IMG/VR virus record: IMGVR_UViG_3300036944_001324
Coordinates: 1 to 64,000 of that record
Length of the DNA stretch: 64,000 bases
Direction: 5' to 3' (one strand)
How positions within the stretch are numbered: position 1 is the first letter of the stretch; every line of letters begins with the position of its first letter. Of the stretch, positions 8-39,369 are shown in pieces. The notes under the pieces were generated by a model that saw only the letters and a list, made by a program, of their open reading frames with translations, was not told where the DNA came from and did no database searches. The position numbers were made by a program, and so were the translations under genes.

Positions 8-1588
8 ATGCAGTCCGGTCGTGCTGGCGCCTGCACGTCTTACTACAACATCTTCGACGTCGAAGCATCGGCCATCGCCCAGCTGCAAGATCCACGGGCT
101 CCAGAAGACAAGCGCAACCGCAAGATCCACTTCGCGGTGAGCTATCATGGCCTCTTCATGAAGAAGGCCGCCTTGAACGAAAACGTCTTCACGTTCAGCT
201 GCAAGACAGCTCCGGATTTGTTCGACGCCTTCTACGGTAAGGACCGCGCTCTCTTTGAGAGCCTCTACAACCGTTACGAGCAAGATCCCACATTCAAGAA
301 GAACTACGTCAACGCCCGTGACTTGCTGGTGATGACTGAGCAGCAAGGGCCGAACATCGGCACCCACTACGACTTCTTCGCCGACAACGCGAACGCCCAC
401 ACTCCGTTCTTGGAACCTATCTACAGTTCCAACCTCTGCCTCGAGATCATGGAAGTGACACATCCTTACAAGGATAGCGATCAACTCCACAAGGCCGAGT
501 ACCACGGGATCATCAAGTTCCTGGACGGCAACGGCCAAGAACAGACGATCGCCCAGAACACGCTTTGCTGGTTCATCAAGGACGGTCAAGCAGACCTCAG
601 CACCGAGTTCCCAGCTGGTGAATTGGAAGAAGGCGCATACGTCAAGACCATCTTCGGCGAATACTTCGTCGAGAAAATCTTGGTGCGTGACCAACAGCCC
701 GAAGTAGCTCTGTGCTCCCTGGCTGGTATCGTTGAGCCGAACATCCGTGACGACGCTCACTACGAGCACGCCATGTACTACGCTCAACGCATGATCGACT
801 ACTGTATCCACAACAGCAGCTACCCGTTCGCCCACATTGCCTTCACGGCCAAGAAGCGTCTGAACGCCGGCATTGGTCTGCTGGGTGCCGCCACCACGAT
901 GGCGCGCAAGAAGCTGCACTACGATACCCAAGAAGGCCTGAACCAGATCCACCGCATGGCCGAACGACACATGTACTTTGCGATCCGTTCTTCCATCCGT
1001 CTGGGCAAGGAACGCGGCAACGCTCCATGGATTCACAAGACACTCTGGCCTAAGGGCTGGTTGCCTATCGACACGTACAAGCGTGAAGTCGACGAGATCT
1101 GTAACGAGCCCCTGCACTACGACTGGGAAGCGGAACGCCGCGCCCTGATCGAGAACAAGGGCATGCGTTTCTCCTGCTTGGTAGCCCACATGCCTACGGA
1201 GAGCTCCTCCAAGGCTGCCGGTGTTCCCAATTCGTGGTACCCAGTCCGTATGATCAGCATGGCCAAGAGCGATGCGTTCAACATCATCGACTGGACCGCT
1301 ACGGATTCGGATCTGCTCGGCTCTGACTACCAACTGGCCTTCACGATCAAACCGAAGGACATGATCAAGGTCTACGCCGTGATCCAGAAGTTCACGGACC
1401 AAGGTATCTCTGCAGATATCTACATGGACCGTTCACGCACTTTGGATATTTCAGCCACTGACTTGGTGGAACACGTTCTTCTGATGCAGCGTCTCGGCCT
1501 CAAGAGCCGTTACTACGTCAACTCCAAGACCGACGACGCAGAATCTGCAAAAGCAGAAGCTTGCGGTTCTGGAGGATGTACTCTCTAA
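8..1588 (+). CDS. nrdA: Ribonucleotide reductase class Ia alpha subunit, C-terminal part (frame open to window start)
   Basis: SNLCLEI (radical Cys and Asn/Glu), VALCSLAG, HMPTESSS, RYYVNS tyrosine pair, C-terminal CGSGGC redox pair. Confidence 0.95.
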   Translation: MQSGRAGACTSYYNIFDVEASAIAQLQDPRAPEDKRNRKIHFAVSYHGLFMKKAALNENVFTFSCKTAPDLFDAFYGKDRALFESLYNRYEQDPTFKKNYVNARDLLVMTEQQGPNIGTHYDFFADNANAHTPFLEPIYSSNLCLEIMEVTHPYKDSDQLHKAEYHGIIKFLDGNGQEQTIAQNTLCWFIKDGQADLSTEFPAGELEEGAYVKTIFGEYFVEKILVRDQQPEVALCSLAGIVEPNIRDDAHYEHAMYYAQRMIDYCIHNSSYPFAHIAFTAKKRLNAGIGLLGAATTMARKKLHYDTQEGLNQIHRMAERHMYFAIRSSIRLGKERGNAPWIHKTLWPKGWLPIDTYKREVDEICNEPLHYDWEAERRALIENKGMRFSCLVAHMPTESSSKAAGVPNSWYPVRMISMAKSDAFNIIDWTATDSDLLGSDYQLAFTIKPKDMIKVYAVIQKFTDQGISADIYMDRSRTLDISATDLVEHVLLMQRLGLKSRYYVNSKTDDAESAKAEACGSGGCTL

Positions 1589-1592
1589 CACA

Positions 1593-1630
1593 ACGTCATA
1601 AAGCTCCGGGCTCAATACCCGGAGCTCTGA
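1593..1630. terminator. Hairpin of the conserved-flank palindrome family
   Basis: ACGTCATAA-AGCTCCGGG-ctcaata-CCCGGAGCT directly after the nrdA stop. Confidence 0.65.
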
Positions 1631-1652
1631 ACAAAAAGATACCAAGTACATC

Positions 1653-2825
1653 ATGAACCAAATCATCACCCCCGTCAATGCAGCGGCCGCCATCATGGCT
1701 AACATGCAAACGCCGTACGAAACCAGCATTGACAAGAAAATCTTCAACTTCGAGAAGACGGACTACGCAGAACCTTCCTTGTTCTTCGGTCAGGCCAGCG
1801 GCCTCTTCGACACCATCAACCAACACTACCCACAGCTCAAGCGCCTGTACAGCCGCCTCAAGGTTCTGGACTGGGGTGAAACAGAATTCCCCTTCTCGCA
1901 GTGCAATCTGGAGTTCAAACGGATGAAGCCTGAAGTGGCGCGTCCGATGATCGTTCAGCTTGGCTGGCAGTGGGAGACTGACTCCATCGCGGCACGCACC
2001 ATCGCGCCGGTGATGTCCAACTTCCTGACCAACGACACAGCCTTCCGCATGTACCAACGTATTGGGGACAATGAAAGTACCCATGCGGCAACCTACGCCG
2101 AAATCGTGCGGTTCTCTTTTGATAACCCCACTGAAGTGATGGACAGCGTGCTCGGTATCAGCGAAAGCGCTCAGCGCCTGGAAACCGTCTCCAAGGTGTT
2201 TGCTGAAGCCTACAAGGCCGGTCTTGAACTCTCCTTGGGTATTCGCAAGCGTGATCAGGAGACGTTCAACATCTTCTTCATGTTCGTAGTCGCTTTGTTC
2301 ATGATGGAGCGCCTGCAATTCATGATCTCTTTTGGTATCACGTTCACCTACGCGCAGCACAGCCACTTCCTACCCATCGGCAAGGCCGTGCAAAAGATCT
2401 GCCAAGACGAGTATGAAATTCATGCTCTGGCAGGTGCTCACATGTACAACATCCTCATGGACACCGGAGAAGGCATCACTGCTAACTGGGCGTGCCGTGA
2501 TACCATTGTCAAGATGTTCAACGAAATCATGGCGGTGGAGCAAAAATGGCTCCCCTTCCTGCTCGCTGGCAACGAAGACCTCTTTGGCGTTACGCTGCGT
2601 GACTACCAGCAATGGGGTTACTTCTGCGCTGGTGATGTGGCTTCCGTCCTTGGCATCAAGACAGACTTCACAGTTCCAAAGACAGTGCCTATTGACTTCC
2701 TCAAGAACTGGATCAACATCTCGTCGATCCAAGCTTCTTTGCAGGAAGAAAAGAGCGCCGCTTACATGATCGGTGCAGTCATCCGTGACGACATCGGTAA
2801 AGTCTTCGACGTTACGGGCCTCTAA
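1653..2825 (+). CDS. nrdB: Ribonucleotide reductase class Ia beta subunit
   Basis: Di-iron/radical motifs ESTHAATY, MERLQF, DEYEIH; C-terminal Tyr in SAAYM; follows nrdA. Confidence 0.92.
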   Translation: MNQIITPVNAAAAIMANMQTPYETSIDKKIFNFEKTDYAEPSLFFGQASGLFDTINQHYPQLKRLYSRLKVLDWGETEFPFSQCNLEFKRMKPEVARPMIVQLGWQWETDSIAARTIAPVMSNFLTNDTAFRMYQRIGDNESTHAATYAEIVRFSFDNPTEVMDSVLGISESAQRLETVSKVFAEAYKAGLELSLGIRKRDQETFNIFFMFVVALFMMERLQFMISFGITFTYAQHSHFLPIGKAVQKICQDEYEIHALAGAHMYNILMDTGEGITANWACRDTIVKMFNEIMAVEQKWLPFLLAGNEDLFGVTLRDYQQWGYFCAGDVASVLGIKTDFTVPKTVPIDFLKNWINISSIQASLQEEKSAAYMIGAVIRDDIGKVFDVTGL

Positions 2826-2833
2826 GGCTTGTC

Positions 2834-3337
2834 ATGAAGATCGGACTGATCTTTGCCAAAGGCACCAACGAGGCCTTTGGCTACAAGAACGCGCTTCCTT
2901 GGGGACGTAACAAGGAAGACATGAAGCACTTCGCTGACATCACCAAAGGTCACGCAGTGCTCATGGGGCGCAACACTTGGGAGAGTCTGCCAGAGGCTTA
3001 CCGGCCTTTGCCAGACCGCACCAACATCATCATGACCCATAGTCAGATGTTACTGCCTAAGGGCAACTTTCACGTATCTTCTTTTGAAGAAGCTATGGCT
3101 GTCGCTAAGTTCAGTCATCGCGATGAGCTCTGGCTCATCGGTGGTGCCAGCCTGTTGCAGTCACTCCAACACCATGCAAGTATTGCCATTGTCACAGAAA
3201 TCGATACAGCATGTACGTTCGATGTACAGGCTCCGGTTCTGGATAAAAGCTGGCAATTAAAAGACACATGCCCAGCATCATTTGAAGGCATAGGTCAGTT
3301 CGGTACCACGTACCGTTTCCACACCTACTGTCGCTGA
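2834..3337 (+). CDS. folA: Dihydrofolate reductase
   Basis: LPWG..EDMKHF, VLMGRNTWESLP, RPLPDRTNI, IGGA. Confidence 0.95.
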   Translation: MKIGLIFAKGTNEAFGYKNALPWGRNKEDMKHFADITKGHAVLMGRNTWESLPEAYRPLPDRTNIIMTHSQMLLPKGNFHVSSFEEAMAVAKFSHRDELWLIGGASLLQSLQHHASIAIVTEIDTACTFDVQAPVLDKSWQLKDTCPASFEGIGQFGTTYRFHTYCR

Positions 3338-3370
3338 TACTCTGTCCGCTGCGCTTTGCCGCGCTTTTTA

Positions 3371-3413
3371 ACTACCTCGGTGCTTCGGCACTGGGGTAGT
3401 CTTTTTATGCTGT
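3371..3413 (+). terminator. Intrinsic terminator-like hairpin ending TTTTTATGCTGT
   Basis: ACTACCTCGGTGC-TTCG-GCACTGGGGTAGT plus conserved 3' flank. Confidence 0.75.
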
Positions 3414-3417
3414 AAAA

Positions 3418-4266
3418 ATGAACTACCAACCTTTTACACCCAAAACCCATCAAGAGCTCGCTCAATTGCTGGTGGACTCCAATAACCCCGCTGTCTGTAT
3501 CCAGCACTTTTCCAACGAGGGCTACGACCCCGATGAGATACAAAGCCAAATTACCAGCTTGATCAATCAGACGTCGTTGGTTGGTCGAACGCTGCGGGTA
3601 GGGGACGCAGCCATGCCGGTGAACAACCTGTGCCCGCAACCTACCGTGGAAAACGGTGTGTTTAAAACACCGCACGGTGCACGCATTCTTTTTGAGATGC
3701 AAGACCCCCACATCGTCCTGTACGATAACTTCATCACTCCGCTGGAATGCGATCAACTCATTGCGTTGTGCGCTGAACGCTTCAATCGTTCTTTGGTGGT
3801 CGGTGGTCCTGGTGAGACAGTGGCTGATACCCGGTCCTCACAGACAGCTCACCTTGCCATCGGGCAAGATCCGTACGTCAAGGCTTTGGAAGCCCGTATT
3901 GCCGAAACAGTTCACTGGCCTACTCTCAAAGCAGAGTCCTTGCAAATTATCAAGTATGAGCCAGGCCAGGAATACCAACCACACTACGACTTCTTCGAAT
4001 ACACCGAAGCAAGTCCTTATCTGGTCTCGCCTGGCTTTCAGCGAACAGCGACCATGATCTTGTACCTCCAGGAGCCTGAGGCAGGAGGAGCAACCAGTTT
4101 CCCTCGTCTTCGTCTGAAGGTACCTGCTCGCCGCGGACAGGCACTGTTCTTCAGTTACCCCACCCCAAATATCAACCACCAAACCCTGCACGGTGGTGAC
4201 CCAGTTATCGAAGGTGTGAAGATCATCGCAACAAAATGGTTCAAGACACTCCAGCACGGATGTTGA
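3418..4266 (+). CDS. 2OG-Fe(II) oxygenase, prolyl-4-hydroxylase-like (P4Hc)
   Basis: ECDQLI, RSS, LQIIKY.PGQEY.PHYDFF (HxD), QRTATMILYL, GGATSFP, TLHGG.PV.EG.KIIATKW. Confidence 0.9.
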   Translation: MNYQPFTPKTHQELAQLLVDSNNPAVCIQHFSNEGYDPDEIQSQITSLINQTSLVGRTLRVGDAAMPVNNLCPQPTVENGVFKTPHGARILFEMQDPHIVLYDNFITPLECDQLIALCAERFNRSLVVGGPGETVADTRSSQTAHLAIGQDPYVKALEARIAETVHWPTLKAESLQIIKYEPGQEYQPHYDFFEYTEASPYLVSPGFQRTATMILYLQEPEAGGATSFPRLRLKVPARRGQALFFSYPTPNINHQTLHGGDPVIEGVKIIATKWFKTLQHGC

Positions 4267-4328: not shown

Positions 4329-5960
4329 ATGAAACAATCTGTGCTCTCGTCTCTGGGTCTGACTCATGTAGTCACCGAGAGCGAACAAGTCTTGGCTGCG
4401 CCCGTCAGCCAGATCCCCACTCCTATCGAAGTGACACCTGAGATCATCGAAGAAGTCGCTAAGGTGGCTCACGAAGCCAACCGCGGCATCAGTGAAGGCA
4501 CGCCTTTGTCGTGGGATGACAGTACCGACGAGATTCGCCAAAGCGCCATCGATGGCGTGCAAGCGATCGTCAACGATCCGACCATGACGCCTGAGAAGTC
4601 GCACAACAACTGGATGCGCTGGAAGGAGTCGAATGGCTGGGTCTTTGGTGAAGTCAAAGACGAAGAAGCCAAGACCCATCCCTGCATGGTTCCATACAAC
4701 GAACTGCCTGAAGACGAACGCGTCAAAGACCAAGTGTTCGTGGACACCGTCAAATCGGAGCTGATGAAGTACAAAGCTTCCGATGTCAGCGAAAACGACA
4801 TTCCTTCCCCGATCAACGAACAAGCAGTTCCATCGGAGAGCGATATCGATGAAACCACGATGGCGCTGGAAACACTCCTGGCGGCAGCTGACTTGCTGGA
4901 AAATACGCCTGACGAAGGCATGAACTCCACCAATGCCGAACTGGTGGAGACGATGCTTGCTACTGCTGTTGGTCCTCTGCAAGCCAGCTATGCGGTGCCT
5001 TCAGCCGAGTCGTACAAACACGGCAAGGTAGCGTCGCTCAAGAGCTTCGCCAAAGAAGGCATCATGGAACGCGCCACCGCCATCGTTGCCAAGCTGATGG
5101 AAATGGTCAAACGCATCGTTGCGTTCGTTACCGTCTGGGTGAAAGCTGCATTCAACGAACTCGAACGCGCCAAGGCTTATCTGCTGTACGTGCGTCGTCA
5201 GATCCAGAAATACCGCAACACCAACAAAACTGGTCCGGTTCTGACTACTGAGCGGATGCGTGGCATGACAGCTCCTTCCAACCAATCTGTCAAGGTTGGA
5301 TCTGACTTGGCGAGCAACGCCATCACGATGCTCGGTGAGATGTCCACGCGTTTCGTTACGCTGTCTCGTTTCGCTGGCTCCATGTTCAAAGAAACCGCGG
5401 ACAGCGTTACGGGTGAGTTCAAAGGTTCACACCTGATCAACAACATCTACACCGCTTTGGACAGCCTGGGAGGAACCCTTCACCAGTCCGGTACCAAGGC
5501 TTTCATTCTCTCGTCGAGTGGCTTGGGATGGCGTGAAGGAGGGTTGGTTGCGCAAGGTCAATCCGTACCAGTTGACGTTACGGATATCTACTTCCTGTCA
5601 GGTCAGATCGCGGGTTACCAAGCGCAGACCGAAATCACTGGCCTGTCGTTCTCCGACGCTGACCGTTTCCTGTCACAGTTCGGTCAGATCGTGTCCGTGA
5701 TTGAAACCCACCTGCGAACCATCTCGCAGTATGCTGCTTCTCTGTCCAAGGTCCAGACCATCTTGGAATCCGTGCAGCGCGCCGGTAGCTCGGAGCAACA
5801 TGGCGCCGCTCGCAACAAAGCCAAGTTGCGTGAAATCCGCATGACACTCAAGATGGGTCGCGCTTTGGCCAAAGCTGCGATGCACGTCAAGAGTACGACG
5901 ACTGACGCCATGATTGGCGCGGTTTCTCTGGTCAATCAGTCATCCAAGAACTGGTCGTAA
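4329..5960 (+). CDS. phiKZ-type internal head protein with N-terminal RyR-like domain
   Basis: HNNWMRWK..NGWVFGEVKD...KTHPCMVPYNELP..ERVKD; LLENT and SAE site followed by the WV..F amphipathic helix seen in the other head paralogs. Confidence 0.7.
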   Translation: MKQSVLSSLGLTHVVTESEQVLAAPVSQIPTPIEVTPEIIEEVAKVAHEANRGISEGTPLSWDDSTDEIRQSAIDGVQAIVNDPTMTPEKSHNNWMRWKESNGWVFGEVKDEEAKTHPCMVPYNELPEDERVKDQVFVDTVKSELMKYKASDVSENDIPSPINEQAVPSESDIDETTMALETLLAAADLLENTPDEGMNSTNAELVETMLATAVGPLQASYAVPSAESYKHGKVASLKSFAKEGIMERATAIVAKLMEMVKRIVAFVTVWVKAAFNELERAKAYLLYVRRQIQKYRNTNKTGPVLTTERMRGMTAPSNQSVKVGSDLASNAITMLGEMSTRFVTLSRFAGSMFKETADSVTGEFKGSHLINNIYTALDSLGGTLHQSGTKAFILSSSGLGWREGGLVAQGQSVPVDVTDIYFLSGQIAGYQAQTEITGLSFSDADRFLSQFGQIVSVIETHLRTISQYAASLSKVQTILESVQRAGSSEQHGAARNKAKLREIRMTLKMGRALAKAAMHVKSTTTDAMIGAVSLVNQSSKNWS

Positions 5961-5966
5961 TTCTCT

Positions 5967-6010
5967 GAACCAATCCCGTTCTCACGAGCGGGGTTCCTCT
6001 TTTTCTTTTT
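5967..6010 (+). terminator. Intrinsic terminator
   Basis: CCCGTTC-TCAC-GAGCGGG stem followed by a T-rich tract. Confidence 0.55.
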
Positions 6011-6024
6011 CGGATATTCTAATC

Positions 6025-7335
6025 ATGAGCATTTTTCGTAAACTGGGTCTGGAAAGCACAGTAATTCCTGAAGAAGGTTTGCCCGTTCAAACACCGACAC
6101 CTGAACAAACTCCGGAGCCAACTCAGGCACCTGCTCCCGCCCCAACAGTAACCGGCAATGTTGATGGTGGCGACAGCGGTGTCAACCTCGAGTCCGACGC
6201 TGAAAGCATGCAGCTCGAAGCTGAAGCCGAAACCATGGAAGGCGAAGGCAATGACATCGGTCTGGCAGGCGCTGACATCTCCAAAGCCCTGATCACGCTG
6301 GAGAACATCTCCACCATCTTGGCCAAAGCCCCGGATGAAGAGATCAACGAAACCACTGCAGCGATCGTTGACGCCGCCATCCAGGACATCAACAGCCGCT
6401 TCGACATCGAGAACGCCAAGGAAATCTCGATCGAGTTCTTCCAAGTGCAGGGCGCCAAACAGTACCGCCATAGCGCTAACGAGGCGATCAACGAACGCCT
6501 GGAACAACTCAAGAAAGCAGCCTACGCCGTGGTCGAGAAGATCATCGGTTGGATCAAGCAGTTCTGGAGCTGGCTGACCGCCACCCACAAGAGCACCAAG
6601 AAGAAGTTGGAAGCCGCCATCGCCGCTGCCAAGAACATCACTGTGGATGCCACCGTCACTTTGCCGAAGTACCAAGCAGACCGTCTGGCTTCTGGCGACC
6701 TGGTCGCTTCGACGGTGATCAACAACGGCCGCACGCTCGAAGCAGTGTGCCACAGCTCGACTTTGTTCATCAAGAACGCTTTCCCGAAAGTGATCGGCGC
6801 GCAAATCGCTTTTGTTCTGCGTGAAGAAGGTGTGCATCTGGCCAAGATGTGCTTTGGTAACTTCAAGTCGGCAGGTGACGCGTACGTTCTGTACAGCGGT
6901 ATCGCCGGCCGTCACGTGGAAGTGGACTTCAGTGGCGATGATCCACGCAGTGCCTTCAAGGTGAACGTCTCCAAGGTCTCTTCGGAACGCGGTAGCAACG
7001 AACTGACACTGAAGGAACATGACGTTGACGTGCTGTGTCAGCAGGCTACCCGCACGCTGCAAGCCAGCACGCTTGGCTACGACGAGTGCATGTCCATGAT
7101 TCGCAAGCTCGAAGCATGGCGTGGTTCGGTTGGCGCTGCTGTGGGTGGTCTCGTGTCTCAACGCATCGCTCTCTTGAATAACTACTCTGCAGCGGTGTCC
7201 ACCCTGAGCTCTGTAGGCTACACCGAAGCGCTGCGTTACGCCGATGCAGTGGTTGGCGTTTTGAACGCATACACGAAGGCAGCCAAGCCTGGTAACGATC
7301 TGACCCCCAACACCAACACCCCCCTTCTCAACTAA
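6025..7335 (+). CDS. phiKZ-type internal head protein paralog (start revised from 5914 to MSIFRKLGLES)
   Basis: GLE, NLE, SIE cleavage-type motifs; Pro/Thr-rich acidic N-terminus; IIGWIKQFWSW helix. Confidence 0.7.
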   Translation: MSIFRKLGLESTVIPEEGLPVQTPTPEQTPEPTQAPAPAPTVTGNVDGGDSGVNLESDAESMQLEAEAETMEGEGNDIGLAGADISKALITLENISTILAKAPDEEINETTAAIVDAAIQDINSRFDIENAKEISIEFFQVQGAKQYRHSANEAINERLEQLKKAAYAVVEKIIGWIKQFWSWLTATHKSTKKKLEAAIAAAKNITVDATVTLPKYQADRLASGDLVASTVINNGRTLEAVCHSSTLFIKNAFPKVIGAQIAFVLREEGVHLAKMCFGNFKSAGDAYVLYSGIAGRHVEVDFSGDDPRSAFKVNVSKVSSERGSNELTLKEHDVDVLCQQATRTLQASTLGYDECMSMIRKLEAWRGSVGAAVGGLVSQRIALLNNYSAAVSTLSSVGYTEALRYADAVVGVLNAYTKAAKPGNDLTPNTNTPLLN

Positions 7336-7466: not shown

Positions 7467-8177
7467 ATGCTGATGTCTGATATCTGGATCAAGGAGCAGT
7501 GTCTCAATAAGGACCGTCCGATGATCACCCCTTTTTATCAAGAATCGATCTCTCACGTGGTCAACGATGTCACGCGCAATCCGCTCGGCGGTCTGATCGC
7601 CAACACCGTTAACACGACGAGCTACGGTCTGTCGTCCTACGGCTACGACTTGAGTCTTGGCAACAAATTCAAAATCTTGCGTTCTGTCAGTGACTTCTAT
7701 CGAGACGAAGTCACTGGTCGTCTGTACGATCGCGACCCCAACGTCATTTACAACGATGGCAAAGGCGCACAAGAAATTGAAATTGATCCCTGCAATTTCA
7801 ACCCACTTCTGTTCCGGGATGTAGAAGTCAAGGACGGCGAGAAGGTGGTCATTCCACCCCGTGGTTTTGCGCTCGGCGTGGTTGGGAACCATCTGGACCT
7901 GCCAGATGACATCATGGGTGTTTGCATGGAGAAATCTACCATTGCCCGTACCGCCATCGAAGTGACGGTCACTCCAGTGGAAGCAGGCTGGCGTGGTTAC
8001 CTCACTCTCGAGATCTGCAACAAGACCGACTACCCGGCAGTTCTGACCGCGGGCATGGGTATCACACAGCTGATGTTCTTCAAGGGTGACCAACCTTGCT
8101 CCGTTCCGTACCATGCGCGCAACGGTAAGTACCAAGATCAACCCGCAGAACCCGTGATTGCACGGATGAAGGATTGA
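7467..8177 (+). CDS. dcd: dCTP deaminase
   Basis: SYGLSSYGYDL, IPPRGFALG, KSTIARTAI.V.VTPVEAGWRGYLTLEI, GITQLMFF, KYQDQ. Confidence 0.93.
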   Translation: MLMSDIWIKEQCLNKDRPMITPFYQESISHVVNDVTRNPLGGLIANTVNTTSYGLSSYGYDLSLGNKFKILRSVSDFYRDEVTGRLYDRDPNVIYNDGKGAQEIEIDPCNFNPLLFRDVEVKDGEKVVIPPRGFALGVVGNHLDLPDDIMGVCMEKSTIARTAIEVTVTPVEAGWRGYLTLEICNKTDYPAVLTAGMGITQLMFFKGDQPCSVPYHARNGKYQDQPAEPVIARMKD

Positions 8178-34985: not shown

Positions 34986-36701
34986 ATGAATCCATTGCTC
35001 AAACAAATCCTGGCTGGCGTTATGGTGCCCGCCAAGGAGAACTTGATCGATCAAGCCGCCCAAGCCAACCAGACAGCGGGCACTACCGATCCTGAACAAG
35101 TTCAAAAGAACGTCGACTTCCAAGCGGAAATCGATCGTCTCAAAGAACTCCAAGGCGACAATAGCGACGGCGGTACATCCACCGATCCTGTTGAAGGAAA
35201 CCCTGACGACGCAGCTGGCGGTGACGACGGTTCTCAACCGAGTCCTGACACTACCGGCGGCGGCGCTGGTGGTACTGACGGTGGTACCGAAGGCGGCGAA
35301 GGCGGTGACAACGGCGACCCCGACAACACCGACCCCGAACAAGATCCAGAACAAGAGCCCGAAGAAGATCCCGGCAACGGCGATGTTCCCGAAGAAGCAG
35401 AAGCTTCGGCCGACGGTGAAGAAGGCGATCAAGAGCCTGATGAAGACACCGAACCTCCAACGGAAGACGCAGAGATCGCTCAAGAAGCTCTGCGTGTGGC
35501 GGTTGAAGCACTGGAGGCTATTGGCCGTGCTCACGAGATGGGTGTTGTGAAACCCCAGCACATCGCGCTGTTCGATCTGGCGATTGAATCGCAATACCTG
35601 AACATCGGCATCACTGCCCGTCCTGGTGTCAGTCTCGAGTCCGTCTTGCCTGAAGGCAGCGCTGGCAAGGTCAAGTACGCCGCCGGCAAGGTGGCTGAAT
35701 TCCTGCGCCAGATCCTGGCCAAGATGAAAGAATACTACACCAAGGTCCTGCGTTGGATTCGTGACTTCTTCCAAGGCTATCGCGAAGCCAATGGCGTGTT
35801 CGCCAAGAACACCGAAGGCCTGCTCAAGCGTATCCAATACCTCAAGGGTAAAGAACGTGATCAAGCTGAGATCGACCAACTGGCTGAAAAGAAAGCCATC
35901 TCTGGCCGGCGCCTGTCTACCGACGGCAGTGTTCCTACGCTAGATTCCATCGCCAGTGGCATTGCAGCGATGCAGTCCATCGGCAAGGGTATCCGCTACT
36001 CGATCACGGAAGAAGAAGCCTACGGTCCTTTGGTGGACTTGGTGTCTGACTTCGACGTGGATGACATGGAAGGCAAACTCGCCAGTACGTCCAACGGCAT
36101 TCGTCCTGAAACCATGTTCCGCATCGCGGGAACAAGCTCCGTGTTTGAAAACTCGGACCTGTACCGCAGCTCTAGCATCAAGGAATCGAGCTTCACCAAC
36201 ATGGTGGATTTCAGCATTCGCAATCTGTTTGGTCTGTCCAGCTATGTGTGGACTTTGGCCGGTCGTGATGTGAGAAACATCGATTCTGTCGTTCACTTCA
36301 ACCACGGTTACAAGTTCGGCATCCATACCGAGCGTCGTGACGTGATGGTTCCTCTTCTCACCAACCTTGCAGACTGCGAGAAAGCCATGCAGATGGTGGC
36401 TCCTTTGCTCAAGGAACTGCAAGCCATGGGTGAGATGACCAAGGTGATGGAAGCTGTTGAAGCCACCATCATCAAGAACCAGTCCGTGATGAAGAACCTG
36501 GTGGACACCCTTGATATGGAAGAAACCTCTAAGATGAAAGTCTTGATGGCTTACTCGACCGGACAGTCGGCTTACACCAACTTGTTCGTCAAGAGCGTGA
36601 CGCTTCACATGCAAAACCTCGATGCGGTGGTCAAGGCGATTCACACCTGGGTTGCCCAGAGCCTGAACATCATTGCACCTGAAAAGGCCCCAGCGGCCTA
36701 A
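34986..36701 (+). CDS. Internal head protein with long acidic low-complexity propeptide
   Basis: DPEQDPEQEPEEDP repeats, VSLES site, WIRDFF helix. Confidence 0.7.
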   Translation: MNPLLKQILAGVMVPAKENLIDQAAQANQTAGTTDPEQVQKNVDFQAEIDRLKELQGDNSDGGTSTDPVEGNPDDAAGGDDGSQPSPDTTGGGAGGTDGGTEGGEGGDNGDPDNTDPEQDPEQEPEEDPGNGDVPEEAEASADGEEGDQEPDEDTEPPTEDAEIAQEALRVAVEALEAIGRAHEMGVVKPQHIALFDLAIESQYLNIGITARPGVSLESVLPEGSAGKVKYAAGKVAEFLRQILAKMKEYYTKVLRWIRDFFQGYREANGVFAKNTEGLLKRIQYLKGKERDQAEIDQLAEKKAISGRRLSTDGSVPTLDSIASGIAAMQSIGKGIRYSITEEEAYGPLVDLVSDFDVDDMEGKLASTSNGIRPETMFRIAGTSSVFENSDLYRSSSIKESSFTNMVDFSIRNLFGLSSYVWTLAGRDVRNIDSVVHFNHGYKFGIHTERRDVMVPLLTNLADCEKAMQMVAPLLKELQAMGEMTKVMEAVEATIIKNQSVMKNLVDTLDMEETSKMKVLMAYSTGQSAYTNLFVKSVTLHMQNLDAVVKAIHTWVAQSLNIIAPEKAPAA

Positions 36702-36789
36702 ACCATAGGAGGCGTAGGCGATGACCGCCTGCGCCCCCTGATCTCTTTTCACCTGTTTCTTTTCCCTTCTTTTTCTGAGAAAGAATTTC

Positions 36790-38046
36790 ATGAACGCTTC
36801 TTTTACCCGGCAACTGCGTGGTGGCCAAGGCGCATTCTCCCGCGAGAACCTGGAAAACGCCGATCTGCCACAACTGCCACCTGAACAAGTCGAACCGGCC
36901 CTGGCCGAAACCGACACCGTGGTCGCTGAAGTCGAGACCGAAGTGCCTACCGCTGTCGCGGAACTGGACGAAGGCACCGACGCCATCGCCGAAGCCGAAG
37001 GCGATGCCAACACCCTGGAAAACACCGCCCAGATCCTGGAAGACGCGATCGCTGCCGAGCCCGTGAATGACCCGGCCAATCCCGAAGCCGAACCCATTCC
37101 TGGCGAAGTGCCTACCGACGTGGAACCCGCCGGTGCTGAAATTGCCGACCTGGCTATCGAAGCCATCTCCAGCAAGTACGCCATGGCTCGCCCTGCCCGC
37201 ATCAGCGCTGAAAGCTTCGCTTCCGGCGCCGCTCGCGTGGCTACCTACCGCGCCCTGTCGACCGAAGCCTTCGAGAAGGCTGGTGAACTGCGCGCCCGTG
37301 CCGTTGAAGGCATCAAGAAGCTGATCGCCTGGTTCAAGGATTTCCTGAAGTCCGTGTTCGACAAGCGCACCAAGCTGGAAAAGCGCATCGCTGCTCTGAC
37401 CGCCTCGGCCAACTCGCTGACCGGCGAAGTCGCTGCTGACGCCAAGATCAAGGTCGGTGGCTGGGGCGCCGTCGTGGGTGAGGCCGTTGCTACCGATCCC
37501 GCTCCTGCTCTGAAGGAACTGGTGAACTTCGTCAACGAATTCGGCCAGATCGCCAAGATCGGTGGCAAGTCCATCGCCGAAACCGGCGACGTGGCTGAAG
37601 TGGACCTGAACCCCAAGAAGCTGGCCGGCCTGACCCTGAAGTTCTCCGCCACTGGTGGCAAGTACTCGGTGACCAAGGAACAATCGGGCAAGCCCGAAGC
37701 CGTGGAAATGGCACCTCTGAACGACGCCGCCATCAAGGCCGTGCTGCGCGACGCGCACAAGGCTCTGAAGTCGCTGACGCTGGCCGAAGCCAACTTCAAC
37801 GTCTTGATCAAAGACATGGAAGGCGCCTACGGCACCCTGAAGTCGGCCGTGACTGGCAAGGAAGGCGGCGAGAAGGTTGACCGCTCTGCTGTGATCGCTC
37901 GTTACCAAGCTTTCAGCAAGCTGTCGGGTTCCGTGTCAGCTGTGGCTCTGGCTGTGATCGGCAACGCTGTCTCGATGGTCGAGAAGTCGATGGCTGCCCA
38001 CAAGGCACCCGCCGCCGCTGCTGCTCCTGCACCCGCTGCCGCCTAA
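36790..38046 (+). CDS. Abundant internal head protein paralog
   Basis: SRE, SAE and STE sites; LENTAQILEDA; WFKDF; very strong GC3 codon bias. Confidence 0.75.
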   Translation: MNASFTRQLRGGQGAFSRENLENADLPQLPPEQVEPALAETDTVVAEVETEVPTAVAELDEGTDAIAEAEGDANTLENTAQILEDAIAAEPVNDPANPEAEPIPGEVPTDVEPAGAEIADLAIEAISSKYAMARPARISAESFASGAARVATYRALSTEAFEKAGELRARAVEGIKKLIAWFKDFLKSVFDKRTKLEKRIAALTASANSLTGEVAADAKIKVGGWGAVVGEAVATDPAPALKELVNFVNEFGQIAKIGGKSIAETGDVAEVDLNPKKLAGLTLKFSATGGKYSVTKEQSGKPEAVEMAPLNDAAIKAVLRDAHKALKSLTLAEANFNVLIKDMEGAYGTLKSAVTGKEGGEKVDRSAVIARYQAFSKLSGSVSAVALAVIGNAVSMVEKSMAAHKAPAAAAAPAPAAA

Positions 38047-38062
38047 CCGTTTCTACGGTTAA

Positions 38063-38099
38063 ATAAAAGCAGGCTCTTCGGGGCCTGCTTTTATGCTGT
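38063..38099 (+). terminator. Conserved-flank palindrome
   Basis: ATAAAAGCAGGCTC-TTCG-GGGCCTGCTTTTATGCTGT. Confidence 0.8.
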
Positions 38100-38217
38100 T
38101 TGTTTCTTTGTGAATTATGTGCGTAGCAGTTAACACCGCGTGAGAACCATGGTATGGATTTCCTCACCTTTAGTTATACCGACAACTTCTTTCTTTTCTT
38201 CCTAGGAAAAACCTGAC

Positions 38218-39369
38218 ATGACTTCTTACACCAAACAACTGCGTACCAGCAAGGGCGTGATTGCCGCTCTCTCGCGCGAAAACATCGATCAAGCTCCAGC
38301 ACCAGTGGCTGATGAGATGACACCCGAAGCAGCGACTGCCGTTCTGGCTGAGCCCGTTGCCCAAGAAATCGAACAAGACGTTCTCGCCCCCGCTGAACAA
38401 ATCGAGCAAGGCACTGACGCTCTGATGGAAGCAGAAGCCGACGCCGGCCTGCTGGAAAACACCGCCCAGATCCTGGAAGACGCATCCGGTGAAACTGCGG
38501 CCGACGTCGATGTGGCGACACCCGAGCTGGCCAACATTACCGTGGAGCGCATCTCTGCCAAGTACGGCATGGCCCGCACTGCCGTCCTGTCCAAGGAAAG
38601 CCTGGGCGCTGCTGCTGGTCGCGTTGAATCCACCCGCTTCATCTCCAAGGAAGCTTTCGAGAAAGCTGGTGAACTGCGCAAGCGTGTGAGCGAAGGCGTG
38701 GCCAAACTGATCGAGTGGTTCAAGAACCTGATCAAGAACATTTTCGACAAGCGCACCAAACTGGAAAATCGTCTGAACGCAGTGTTGGCCATGACAAAGA
38801 CCAAAGAGGGCGTTAAAGCCAGCGAAGACGCCACGATCAACGTCACCAGGGACATTGCCGAACTCAATGTTTCTGATGTCAGCGCTTTGATCTATAAATT
38901 CAAAAAGGTCGAAGAACTGGCCAAGGAAAACGCAGCTTCCATGCAAGGCATGGAAAACGAAACCCTTGACTTCAATCCCAAGAAACTCGGCGGTGTCACG
39001 TTGATCTGCGACATCGTTGACGGCAAAGTCTCGGTTACCAAGCAGACGGAAAAAGGACAGGAGACGTTGAAGAAAGCCGTTCCTACCCTGACTGACGTGA
39101 CCGAAGCTGCCAAGATGGGCCTGACCATCCTGAAAGATCTGAAAACAGCCGAAGCATCGTGTGAAAAGATCGTTGCCGAAATGGGTAGCGCTACACAAAA
39201 ACTCAAAGCCCTGGTCACCGGTGAAGACAATGGTGCTGGGGCAACACGTGGTAACATTCTGGCACGTTACCAAGGTGTCACCACTCTGGCAGGCGCGTTG
39301 AGCGCCGTCACACTGAAAGTGGTCGCTGACCTCAGCACTATGTGCGAGCAAAGTTTGGCTGCTTACTAA
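38218..39369 (+). CDS. Internal head protein paralog (tandem duplicate of 36790..38046)
   Basis: SRE and SKE sites; LENTAQILEDA, EAFEKAGELR, FDKRTKLE, NPKKL shared with the upstream paralog. Confidence 0.75.
   Translation: MTSYTKQLRTSKGVIAALSRENIDQAPAPVADEMTPEAATAVLAEPVAQEIEQDVLAPAEQIEQGTDALMEAEADAGLLENTAQILEDASGETAADVDVATPELANITVERISAKYGMARTAVLSKESLGAAAGRVESTRFISKEAFEKAGELRKRVSEGVAKLIEWFKNLIKNIFDKRTKLENRLNAVLAMTKTKEGVKASEDATINVTRDIAELNVSDVSALIYKFKKVEELAKENAASMQGMENETLDFNPKKLGGVTLICDIVDGKVSVTKQTEKGQETLKKAVPTLTDVTEAAKMGLTILKDLKTAEASCEKIVAEMGSATQKLKALVTGEDNGAGATRGNILARYQGVTTLAGALSAVTLKVVADLSTMCEQSLAAY

What the first reader, a model, noticed from the sequence alone, without database searches (positions are those of the whole stretch)
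4443..4772. RyR-type domain grafted into the propeptide of an internal head protein
Seen: residues about 39-148 read VAKVAHEANR...W......RQSAIDGV....DP..TPEKSHNNWMRWKESNGWVFGEVKDEEAKTHPCMVPYNELPEDERVKD. This matches the RyR repeat domain (ryanodine-receptor repeat), also known from stand-alone phage and bacterial proteins. It lies upstream of the S-A-E site at 5001-5009. None of the four paralogous head proteins in this window has it. Established: phiKZ-like prohead protease cuts after S/A/G-x-E, and internal head proteins are ejected into the host. Inference: the domain is either released as a free module during maturation or carried into the cell. RyR repeats have been linked to nucleotide binding and occur in prokaryotic conflict systems, so a packaged nucleotide-sensing or sponge function is plausible.
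Basis: partly seen in the sequence, partly recalled or inferred. Interest (0 to 1): 0.72.

Follow-up and report, generated by a model that had tools for sequence, protein, structure and literature searches.

The report
Anti-Thoeris RyR module fused to head protein
An uncultivated giant phage carries a nucleotide-binding RyR domain, of the kind phages use to block the bacterial Thoeris alarm signal, built into the cleavable front part of one of its internal head proteins, so the counter-defence may travel inside the virus particle.

Summary
ORF 4329-5960 (+, 543 aa) scores above Pfam's curated cut-offs for both RyR (PF02026, residues 88-135) and phiKZ_IP (PF12699, residues 174-355). A confident model of residues 30-153 matches RyR Repeat12 structures at Z 10. 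It is the only RyR hit in the 271.6-kb phage genome. The four other IP paralogues carry low-complexity acidic sequence in that position.

The fusion is rare but not unique. Five clusters at 50% identity, out of 1.84 billion representatives, carry it, all in the same gene order. Across these proteins (25-30% overall identity) the RyR core and the S225-x-E227 motif are invariant, while the IP body has almost fully diverged.

A 2026 preprint shows that phage RyR-domain proteins (RyDEP) cleave or sequester the Thoeris signals 2'/3'cADPR. Its four ligand and catalytic residues align with H92, W95, H117 and D134 here.

The genome encodes a phiKZ gp175-type prohead protease. Motifs at about E17 and at E181/E227 would excise an 18-23 kDa acidic RyR fragment. 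In phiKZ the equivalent N-terminal fragments stay in the capsid, and the Tad1 sponge is packaged, cleaved and injected.

Most likely this is a virion-loaded anti-Thoeris module. Binding, cleavage and ejection are all untested. I rate it a new variant of known kinds.

The parts
4329..5960 (+). RyR-IP gene: 543-aa precursor internal head protein carrying a RyR domain (P0002)
   Evidence: ORF list and translation. Pfam RyR and phiKZ_IP both above their curated cut-offs.
4329..4379 (+). N-terminal leader, residues 1-17 (M..LGL..VTE), ending in a protease-type motif. It reads V-T-E here and A-T-E, A-L-E or A-R-E in the other fusion proteins.
   Evidence: Alignments A3 and A6. All five paralogues have a leader followed by [S/A/G]-x-E at about residues 17-22. 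phiKZ gp162 is cut at E17|R18 and gp93 at E13|S14 (PMC11297242). Cleavage here is inferred.
4416..4787 (+). RyR (Repeat12-type, RyDEP-like) domain, residues 30-153.
   Evidence: Pfam, PDB sequence hits, model pLDDT above 93, Z 10.0 to 9l91_A and 6uhi. 70-73% identical between orthologues whose IP body is 49-50% identical.
4602..4613 (+). H92 and W95, equivalents of RyDEP H75 (catalytic base / ribose contact) and W78 (adenine stacking)
   Evidence: Alignment A2 with the RyDEP orthologue Aegeus gp81. Invariant in 8 fusion proteins and in 70 RyR homologues. Residue roles are from PMC13232231.
4677..4679 (+). H117, equivalent of RyDEP H100 (phosphate contact)
   Evidence: PMC13232231.
4728..4730 (+). 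D134, equivalent of RyDEP D117 (catalytic acid)
   Evidence: invariant in the fusion proteins; at least 90% conserved among 70 homologues.
4773..5000 (+). Acidic linker and helical region, residues 149-224. It holds the A179-L-E181 motif (4863-4871), conserved as [A/S]-x-E-T-L in 7 of 8 fusion proteins.
   Evidence: Residues 149-164 are predicted disordered. 16 acidic against 1 basic residue over 149-227.
5001..5009 (+). S225-A226-E227, predicted maturation cleavage site (cut after E227)
   Evidence: S225 and E227 are invariant in all 8 fusion proteins. The motif aligns with S-x-E in all four window paralogues and with S242-M-E244 of phiKZ gp162. Cleavage itself is inferred.
5049..5057 (+). 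A241-K242-E243, a second conserved protease-type motif 16 residues downstream
   Evidence: [S/A]-x-E at this column in 7 of 8 fusion proteins.
5010..5957 (+). Basic, helix-rich IP body, residues 228-543 (34.4 kDa, pI 10.0)
   Evidence: PF12699 hit, low-confidence helix-rich model, charge and pI.
5972..6005 (+). Terminator-like hairpin (10 pairs) plus T-rich tail between the RyR-IP gene and the next IP gene
   Evidence: The number of such sites in the region is not above chance; only its intergenic position is suggestive.
6025..7335 (+). Adjacent IP paralogue (IP2) without RyR. The likely true start is ATG 6025 (MSIFRKLGLEST...), not the TTG at 5914.
   Evidence: PF12699. Leader motif shared with the RyR-IP protein.
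34986..39369 (+). Three further IP paralogues (34986-36701, 36790-38046, 38218-39369), all without RyR. Their N-terminal regions are acidic and low-complexity.

Best explanation
The gene encodes a precursor internal head protein of an uncultivated phiKZ-like jumbo phage that probably forms a phage nucleus. The predicted layout is as follows.
- Residues 1-17: targeting leader.
- Residues 30-153: RyR domain of the RyDEP type.
- Residues 149-224: acidic linker.
- S225-A-E227: conserved S-x-E maturation site.
- Residues 228-543: basic helix-rich body.

SHOWN:
- Both domains are present.
- The fusion is conserved in one syntenic lineage.
- The RyR core and the S-x-E motif are the most conserved parts.
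- The four RyDEP ligand and catalytic residues are present.
- The genome has a gp175-type prohead protease.

INFERRED:
(1) The IP leader and body carry the protein into the prohead.
(2) The protease cuts after about E17 and after E181 and/or E227. This frees an 18-23 kDa acidic RyR fragment from the 34-kDa basic body.
(3) The RyR fragment stays inside the filled capsid and leaves with the DNA and the other ejected proteins.
(4) In the new host it binds the Thoeris second messengers 2'/3'cADPR. It acts more probably as a sponge than as a glycosidase. This blunts ThsA-type effectors before any phage gene is expressed.

The unprocessed precursor in the producing cell's cytoplasm could do the same late in infection.
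For: - Domain calls: 5, 21, 68, 76.
- There is a single RyR in the genome and there are five IP paralogues.
- The same fusion sits in the same gene order (RNR large, RNR small, DHFR, optional 2OG oxygenase, RyR-IP, IP, optional IP, dCTP deaminase) in relatives down to about 25-32% identity.
- In alignment A3 the invariant columns are the RyR core, including H92, W95, H117 and D134, plus S225/E227. The IP body has almost no invariant column.
- Between orthologues the RyR part is 70-73% identical and the body 49-50%.
- The RyDEP residues H75, W78, H100 and D117 align to H92, W95, H117 and D134 (roles from PMC13232231).
- The domain is 46% identical to Pectobacterium phage CB3 gp073. That sequence is identical to homologue H7 of the preprint, a nanomolar cADPR sponge that defeats Thoeris in vivo.
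- A separate phage protein fuses an Acb2/Tad1 hairpin domain to a RyR domain. This links RyR to signal sponges independently.
- The genome has a gp175 protease homologue at 126345-127067 (40% identity, E 2e-44).
- S-x-E aligns across all paralogues and phiKZ gp162.
- Precedents: phiKZ gp162 fragment 18-137 and gp93 14-84 are retained in mature capsids (PMC11297242). phiKZ Tad1/gp184 is processed by the head protease and injected (PMC12676376, PMC13282480).
- No Tad1/gp184 homologue was found in this genome, so the RyR-IP protein could fill that role.
Against: - There is no virion proteome, no cleavage data and no ligand assay for this protein or any relative. All members are metagenomic.
- In SPN3US most propeptides are cut at several sites and are no longer detectable in mature heads (PMC10052503).
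- In phiKZ the retained N-terminal fragments of gp93 and gp162 are bound to the capsid wall, which would not deliver them to the host (PMC11297242).
- The P3 residue of the leader motif is V in this genome's clade, not S, A or G.
- RyR-core protease motifs are not depleted relative to shuffles (15 observed, 18.2 expected), so there is no signature of protection from the protease.
- Two of the eight RyDEP homologues tested in the preprint did not bind cADPR, and the conserved residues do not separate binders, non-binders and enzymes.
- The gene sits among nucleotide-metabolism genes, not in a head-gene block, so its expression timing is unknown.
- The RyDEP work is a preprint.
Confidence: 0.42

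Rival explanations
1. The RyR domain works only in the producing cell. The abundant IP precursor acts as a cytoplasmic cADPR sponge or enzyme late in infection. The RyR-bearing propeptide is then cut off in the prohead, fragmented and lost, so nothing functional is delivered to the next host.
For: The general rule, and the SPN3US data, are that propeptides are cleaved at several sites and are mostly undetectable in mature heads (PMC10052503). Chimallivirus capsids assemble in the cytoplasm, where Thoeris signals are. Several protease-type motifs flank the domain.
Against: A stand-alone gene would do this job, as in Serratia phage PCH45 (118 aa) and Klebsiella phage Miami (139 aa). Yet the fusion has been kept down to about 25-32% identity. 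A folded 18-23 kDa domain, possibly dimeric, is not the kind of small peptide that escapes a capsid. phiKZ retains equivalent N-terminal fragments (PMC11297242).
Confidence: 0.25
2. The RyR fragment is a structural part of the capsid interior. Like the N-terminal regions of phiKZ gp93 and gp162, it stays attached to the inner capsid wall. There the dimer-forming RyR fold serves as a cross-link or assembly device with no anti-defence role.
For: Its position between a leader site and a maturation site matches the capsid-bound fragments gp162 18-137 and gp93 14-84 (PMC11297242). RyR single repeats form homodimers in solved structures (3nrt, and RyDEP in PMC13232231).
Against: The capsid-bound phiKZ fragments are extended, fibre-like peptides, not globular domains. 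The four paralogues have low-complexity sequence there. The ligand-contact residues H92, W95, H117 and D134 are invariant while the rest of the protein drifts, although these residues are conserved family-wide and could be partly structural. The homodimer prediction gave no answer.
Confidence: 0.13
3. The domain binds a different adenine nucleotide (ATP, ADP or another ADPR derivative) and serves a role unrelated to Thoeris, for example regulating ejection or inner-body disassembly, or countering another NAD-derived signalling defence.
For: Animal Repeat12 domains bind ATP, ADP and AMP-PCP (entries 6uhh, 9l90, 9l9b). Two of eight phage homologues did not bind cADPR (PMC13232231).
Against: The closest characterised relatives are the phage proteins: 46% identity to the H7 sponge, against 16-17% to RyR3 in the structural alignment. 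A RyR-Tad1 hairpin fusion exists.
Confidence: 0.12

Closest known systems
RyDEP family: phage RyR-domain defence-evasion proteins (Mycobacterium phage DyoEdafos gp78 glycosidase; sponge-type homologues H4 Ruegeria and H7 Pectobacterium). PMC13232231, preprint May 2026.
   Same: Same Pfam family and fold. H75, W78, H100 and D117 are conserved at identical spacing (H92, W95, H117, D134). 46% identity to H7 (Pectobacterium phage CB3 gp073) and 32% to the RyDEP orthologue Aegeus gp81.
   Different: Known members are stand-alone proteins or carry unrelated, non-virion extensions. None is described as fused to a head protein: the preprint's text has no occurrence of head, virion or jumbo. No NARP1 genes lie beside it or elsewhere in this genome. 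Activity is untested.
phiKZ internal head / inner body proteins (PF12699: gp93, gp162 and others)
   Same: Pfam hit above the cut-off, helix-rich basic C-terminal body, acidic N-terminal region, short leader followed by an S/A/G-x-E motif, and a downstream S-x-E that aligns with phiKZ gp162 S242-M-E244. A gp175 protease homologue is in the genome.
   Different: A folded RyR domain occupies the N-terminal region, which in phiKZ is an extended capsid-binding peptide and in this phage's own paralogues is low-complexity sequence. There was no tblastn match to any IP of a cultivated phage at E 1e-5.
phiKZ Tad1 (gp184): virion-borne anti-Thoeris/anti-CBASS sponge
   Same: The proposed logic is the same: a signal sponge built into a capsid-associated protein, separated by the head protease and delivered with the DNA (PMC12676376, PMC13282480).
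   Different: The fold is unrelated (Tad1 against RyR) and the carrier is unrelated (not PF12699). The order is opposite: in gp184 the capsid anchor is N-terminal and the sponge C-terminal. No gp184 or Tad1 homologue was found in this genome.
T4 internal protein IPI* (from my own knowledge, not tested here)
   Same: A small anti-defence protein targeted to the prohead by a short N-terminal leader. The prohead protease removes the leader, and the protein is injected to block a host defence (GmrSD).
   Different: A single small protein, not a module inside a larger IP. It inhibits a nuclease directly and does not target a nucleotide signal.
Stand-alone RyR proteins of other jumbo phages (Serratia phage PCH45, 118 aa; Klebsiella phage Miami, 139 aa)
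   Same: Same domain, in jumbo phages (30-33% identity). PCH45 is, from my own knowledge, a nucleus-forming phage.
   Different: They are separate small genes with no IP part.

Membership tests
Pfam RyR (PF02026) | HMM score above the curated gathering cut-off | tested here: met
   44.4 bits against 27.4; 46.9 bits in the six-frame genome search.
Pfam RyR (PF02026) | Repeat12-type helical fold | tested here: met
   Model pLDDT above 93 over about 40-150. Z 10.0, 121-124 aligned residues, to 9l91_A and 6uhi; all top hits are RyR domains.
RyDEP (anti-Thoeris RyR-domain proteins) | Ligand and catalytic residues H75, W78, H100 and D117 of DyoEdafos gp78 | tested here: met
   They align to H92, W95, H117 and D134 via the orthologue Aegeus gp81. 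All four are invariant in the 8 fusion proteins.
RyDEP (anti-Thoeris RyR-domain proteins) | Q54 equivalent (a mutated residue in the preprint) | tested here: inconclusive
   A one-residue indel between W62 and H92 makes Q54 align with either S72 (MAFFT) or Q71 (ungapped spacing).
RyDEP (anti-Thoeris RyR-domain proteins) | Homodimer | tested here: inconclusive
   Complex prediction with two copies of residues 28-160 returned 'no answer'.
RyDEP (anti-Thoeris RyR-domain proteins) | Binds or hydrolyses 2'cADPR/3'cADPR and rescues phage from Thoeris | not testable with these tools
   Needs EMSA/ITC, TLC/LC-MS and plaque assays as in PMC13232231.
phiKZ_IP (PF12699) internal head proteins | HMM score above the curated cut-off | tested here: met
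   35.7 bits against 27, residues 174-355. The precomputed Pfam calls for all orthologues agree.
phiKZ_IP (PF12699) internal head proteins | Processing by a gp175-type prohead protease at S/A/G-x-E | tested here: inconclusive
   The protease gene is present. Motifs are conserved at about 15-17, 179-181, 225-227 and 241-243. Actual cleavage cannot be tested here.
phiKZ_IP (PF12699) internal head proteins | Presence in the virion and ejection into the host | not testable with these tools
   There is no isolate; all members are metagenomic contigs.
Chimalliviridae (nucleus-forming jumbo phages) | Chimallin (phiKZ gp54) homologue | tested here: inconclusive
   Two collinear weak matches (E 1e-6 and 1.5e-6, 22-27% identity) cover both halves of one 689-aa ORF at about 165.2-167.1 kb. 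This suggests membership but does not establish it.

The most novel reading that the evidence does not exclude
A lineage of probably nucleus-forming jumbo phages pre-loads its capsid with an anti-Thoeris RyR module. The module is embedded between two prohead-protease sites of an internal head protein. The cADPR sponge or glycosidase would then arrive with the DNA, before any phage transcription. More generally, the N-terminal region of phiKZ-type IPs, usually called a propeptide, would be a cargo slot through which jumbo phages package counter-defence domains.
Probability: 0.3. Interest if true: 0.75.

Novelty: new variant of a known kind. Interest (0 to 1): 0.6.

Why it matters
Signalling defences such as Thoeris act within minutes of infection. 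A counter-measure that is already in the particle avoids the race between host signal production and phage gene expression. Only phiKZ Tad1 is described as such a packaged signal sponge, and a 2026 review calls it the only anti-defence protein described in jumbo phages (PMC13282480).

A second, unrelated sponge fold riding on a different carrier would show that packaging of signal sponges evolved convergently. It would give a sequence rule for finding more packaged effectors: a leader, a cargo domain, an S-x-E site and an IP body. It would also extend the newly described RyDEP family into virion proteins. The claim can be tested with a synthetic gene, the phage's own protease and published assays.

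Tried and rejected
- Depletion of protease motifs inside the RyR core, as a sign that the domain is protected from the protease. Result: 15 observed against 18.2 expected from shuffles, P about 0.22, and the sequences are related. No signal. The recurrent A-H-E at 47-49 is a family-wide RyR helix motif, not evidence of a site.
- Homodimer prediction for residues 28-160 returned no answer. It counts neither for nor against.
- Word-index protein searches with the RyR region alone, and with the profile of alignment A3, returned only the six close clusters. They did not even recover P0023-P0026, so they say nothing about how rare the fusion is. The exhaustive representative search is the basis for that claim, and only its best 150 of 4842 hits could be inspected.
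- The IMG/VR pattern scan gave 22 RyR-only loci and no further fusion. The patterns came from the RyR core only.
- Megablast against cultivated phages found no match, and tblastn hits covered only the RyR part.
- Searches of the phage genome for Tad1/gp184 and for the NARP1 enzymes (Adps, Namat) found nothing. These are weak negatives from single queries.
- Thomas et al. 2012 (PMC3323674) and Li et al. 2024 (PMC12159963) are not held. The phiKZ cleavage sites and Tad1 injection are therefore cited from secondary sources. I could not confirm that gp162 E244 is a verified cut site.
Those four rows were left out and not sent elsewhere.
- The full-length model is of low confidence (pLDDT 61). It was used only for disorder and helix content.
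Full report
**1. What is in the sequence**

It belongs to ORF 4329-5960 on the + strand, 543 aa, P0002.

- Pfam places two families above their curated cut-offs. RyR (PF02026) scores 44.4 bits against 27.4, at residues 88-135. phiKZ_IP (PF12699) scores 35.7 bits against 27, at residues 174-355.
- PHROGs match only the RyR part, to families of unknown function.
- A sequence search of the PDB finds ryanodine-receptor Repeat12 domains down to E 7.6e-24, the Bacteroides single-repeat protein (3nrt), and a 139-aa 'Ryr domain-containing protein', 35tm_A, at E 2.9e-14.
- An AlphaFold model of residues 1-240, built on 70 sequences, has pLDDT above 93 across about 40-150.
- Every top structural match is a RyR domain. 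The best are Z 10.0 over model residues 30-153, against human RyR3 Repeat12 with nucleotide and drug bound (9l91_A) and the Bacteroides/human chimera 6uhi.
- S-A-E is residues 225-227, window 5001-5009.

**2. The genome**

- The window is the first 64 kb of a 271,654-bp IMG/VR virus record rated 99% complete.
- It contains exactly one RyR match and five PF12699 proteins: 4329-5960, 5914/6025-7335, 34986-36701, 36790-38046 and 38218-39369.
- The genome encodes a homologue of the phiKZ head maturation protease gp175, at 126345-127067 (40% identity, E 2e-44).
- It also encodes a 689-aa ORF whose two halves match the two halves of the phiKZ nuclear shell protein weakly but collinearly. The phage is therefore phiKZ-like and probably forms a phage nucleus.
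- No cultivated phage matches the gene at DNA level.
- Near-identical sequence occurs in shale-gas, biofilm, river, groundwater and wastewater metagenomes.

**3. How common the fusion is**

- RyR domains are widespread in phages. 298 records match by tblastn, always on the RyR part alone.
- In Serratia phage PCH45, which I know to be nucleus-forming, and in Klebsiella phage Miami, the RyR protein is a separate small gene of 118 and 139 aa.
- An exhaustive HMMER search of 1.84 billion representatives gave 4842 hits. Among the best 150, only five clusters are long proteins that also align beyond the RyR domain: the protein's own cluster plus P0023-P0026. Pfam confirms RyR plus phiKZ_IP in each.
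- Where enough flanking DNA is held (L008, L015, L018, L019), the fusion gene lies in the same neighbourhood: RNR large subunit, RNR small subunit, DHFR, optional 2OG oxygenase, RyR-IP, IP, optional IP, dCTP deaminase. The short P0026 contig (L016) shows only RyR-IP followed by two IP genes.
- An IMG/VR scan found only RyR-only loci.

The fusion is therefore rare. It marks one uncultivated lineage and has been inherited through divergence down to about 25-32% identity. It is not a general feature of phiKZ-like head proteins.

**4. What is conserved**

- In the alignment of eight fusion proteins (A3) the invariant columns are almost all in the RyR core: H92, W95, G103, W104, G107, K110-E112, K115, H117, P118, V121-Y123, L126, P127, E130, K133, D134 and F137.
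- S225 and E227 are also invariant. The C-terminal body has essentially no invariant column.
- Between this protein and its 54%-identical orthologues the RyR part is 70-73% identical and the body 49-50%.
- The N-terminal 227 residues are strongly acidic (fragment 18-227: 23.0 kDa, pI 4.1). The body is basic (228-543: 34.4 kDa, pI 10.0).

**5. Cleavage anatomy**

- All five paralogues begin with a short leader followed by an [S/A/G]-x-E motif at about residues 17-22. The RyR-IP protein has V-T-E here, and A-T-E, A-L-E or A-R-E in the other clades.
- S225-x-E227 aligns with S-I-E, S-L-E, S-A-E and S-K-E in the four paralogues, and with S242-M-E244 of phiKZ gp162.
- Two further motifs are conserved in 7 of 8 fusion proteins: [A/S]-x-E-T-L at 179-183 and [A/S]-x-E at 241-243.
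- In phiKZ, gp162 is cut at E17|R18 and E137|D138, and gp93 at E13|S14. In the gp162 sequence those positions carry the motifs S-L-E (15-17) and S-N-E (135-137).
- The fragments gp162 18-137 and gp93 14-84 remain in the mature capsid, bound to its inner surface. The helix-rich C-terminal domains are thought to form the inner body (PMC11297242).
- In SPN3US, by contrast, most propeptides are cut at several A-x-E sites and are no longer detectable, although some are partly retained (PMC10052503).
- The full-length model is of low confidence. It predicts disorder at 1-33 and 149-164 and a helix-rich C-terminal part.

The most probable products are the leader (1-17), an RyR fragment (18-181 or 18-227; 18.3 or 23.0 kDa) and the IP body. 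All cleavages are inferred.

**6. What the RyR domain does**

A May 2026 preprint (PMC13232231) makes three relevant points.
- Mycobacteriophage DyoEdafos gp78 (RyDEP) is a RyR-fold glycosidase. [quoted passage not shown]
- Six of eight other phage RyR homologues bind these signals without cleaving them.
- Two of them (H4 from a Ruegeria phage, H7 from a Pectobacterium phage) act as nanomolar sponges that defeat Thoeris in vivo.

The contacts in RyDEP are H75, W78, H100 and D117. I fetched the RyDEP orthologue Aegeus gp81, which lies in the same NARP1 operon and has the same numbering. I also fetched Pectobacterium phage CB3 gp073, whose sequence is identical to H7 in the preprint's supplement.

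In alignment A2 the four residues fall on H92, W95, H117 and D134. The equivalent of Q54 is ambiguous by one residue. The domain is 46% identical to the H7 sponge and 32% to the glycosidase orthologue.

The same residues are conserved in the sponges, so sequence cannot tell sponge from enzyme. Three things favour a sponge, but only weakly:
- hydrolysis was seen in only one of nine proteins tested;
- this domain is closer to H7 than to the glycosidase;
- no NARP1 genes were found in this genome.

As independent support, one representative hit (P0088, in a phage-like contig) fuses an Acb2/Tad1 hairpin domain to a RyR domain.

**7. Why fuse it to a head protein**

phiKZ offers a direct precedent for the logic. 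Its Tad1 sponge (gp184) is a capsid-associated protein. Its functional part is freed by the head protease and injected in the next infection (PMC12676376; PMC13282480).

This genome has no detectable gp184 or Tad1 homologue. The RyR-IP protein may be this lineage's analogue, built from an unrelated sponge fold and an unrelated carrier, with the sponge placed N-terminal to the carrier's body.

If copy numbers resemble the phiKZ inner-body proteins (100-200 per virion, PMC13282480), the delivered capacity would be of the order of a few hundred nanomolar in a 1-fL cell. That figure is my own arithmetic. It is finite, but it would act before any transcription.

**8. Rivals**

(a) The domain acts only on the precursor in the producing cell and is then discarded.
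(b) The fragment stays on the capsid wall as a structural element.
(c) The ligand is another adenine nucleotide.

The long conservation of the fusion, when a stand-alone gene would serve for (a), and the invariance of the ligand-contact residues, against (b), make these less likely. Neither is excluded. The phiKZ gp93 and gp162 data specifically warn that retained N-terminal fragments can be immobilised on the shell.

**9. Verdict**

The fusion is rare, conserved and specific to one lineage. The packaging and ejection step is plausible by precedent but unproven. I rate it a new variant of known kinds (RyDEP domain, phiKZ-type IP, packaged sponge as in Tad1), with interest 0.6.

Noticed in passing
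P0088 (loci L046:498-1460, L047:418-1380): A 320-aa protein in a phage-like contig (RusA and a DNA methyltransferase nearby) fuses an Acb2/Tad1 hairpin domain (PF24729, E 1.3e-16) to a C-terminal RyR domain. That is two signal-sponge folds in one protein.
   Followed up: partly
window 5914-6040: The ORF list starts the second IP gene at TTG 5914, overlapping the RyR-IP gene. The conserved leader (MSIFRKLGLEST) and the alignment with the paralogues point to ATG 6025 as the real start.
   Followed up: partly
window 5972-6005: A 10-pair GC-rich hairpin followed by a T-rich run lies in the 64-nt gap between the RyR-IP gene and the next IP gene. It may end or attenuate transcription between the two paralogues. 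The count of such sites in the region is not above chance.
   Followed up: no
window 8-4266 and 7467-8177: The RyR-IP and IP2 genes sit inside a nucleotide-metabolism block (RNR large and small subunits, DHFR, a 2OG-Fe(II) oxygenase, dCTP deaminase), away from the other three IP genes at 35-39 kb. This placement is conserved in all relatives and leaves expression timing open.
   Followed up: partly
L008:1-3237: In the 54%-identical relative (NCBI metagenome contig, 256 kb) the RNR large-subunit gene carries a LAGLIDADG_3 domain between two Ribonuc_red_lgC hits, which suggests an intein or homing-endonuclease insertion.
   Followed up: no
window 34986-36701 (IP3), residues about 55-165: IP3 has an unusually long, extremely acidic, Gly/Asp/Glu/Pro-rich low-complexity stretch in the position where the RyR-IP protein has its RyR domain. 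The N-terminal slot of these paralogues is highly variable in length and content.
   Followed up: no
genome G000:C1:165237-167105 (outside the window): A 689-aa ORF gives two weak, collinear matches to the phiKZ nuclear shell protein gp54 (22-27% identity). It is a probable, very divergent chimallin.
   Followed up: partly
H99-H101 (Pseudomonas phages vB_PaeP-D14S, BR197a, BR150a): RyR-domain ORFs in these GenBank records are annotated 'Anti-CRISPR protein' or 'alanyl-tRNA synthetase', and one Salmonella phage record calls its RyR ORF a 'minor head protein' (H29). These are probably annotation errors and were not checked.
   Followed up: no
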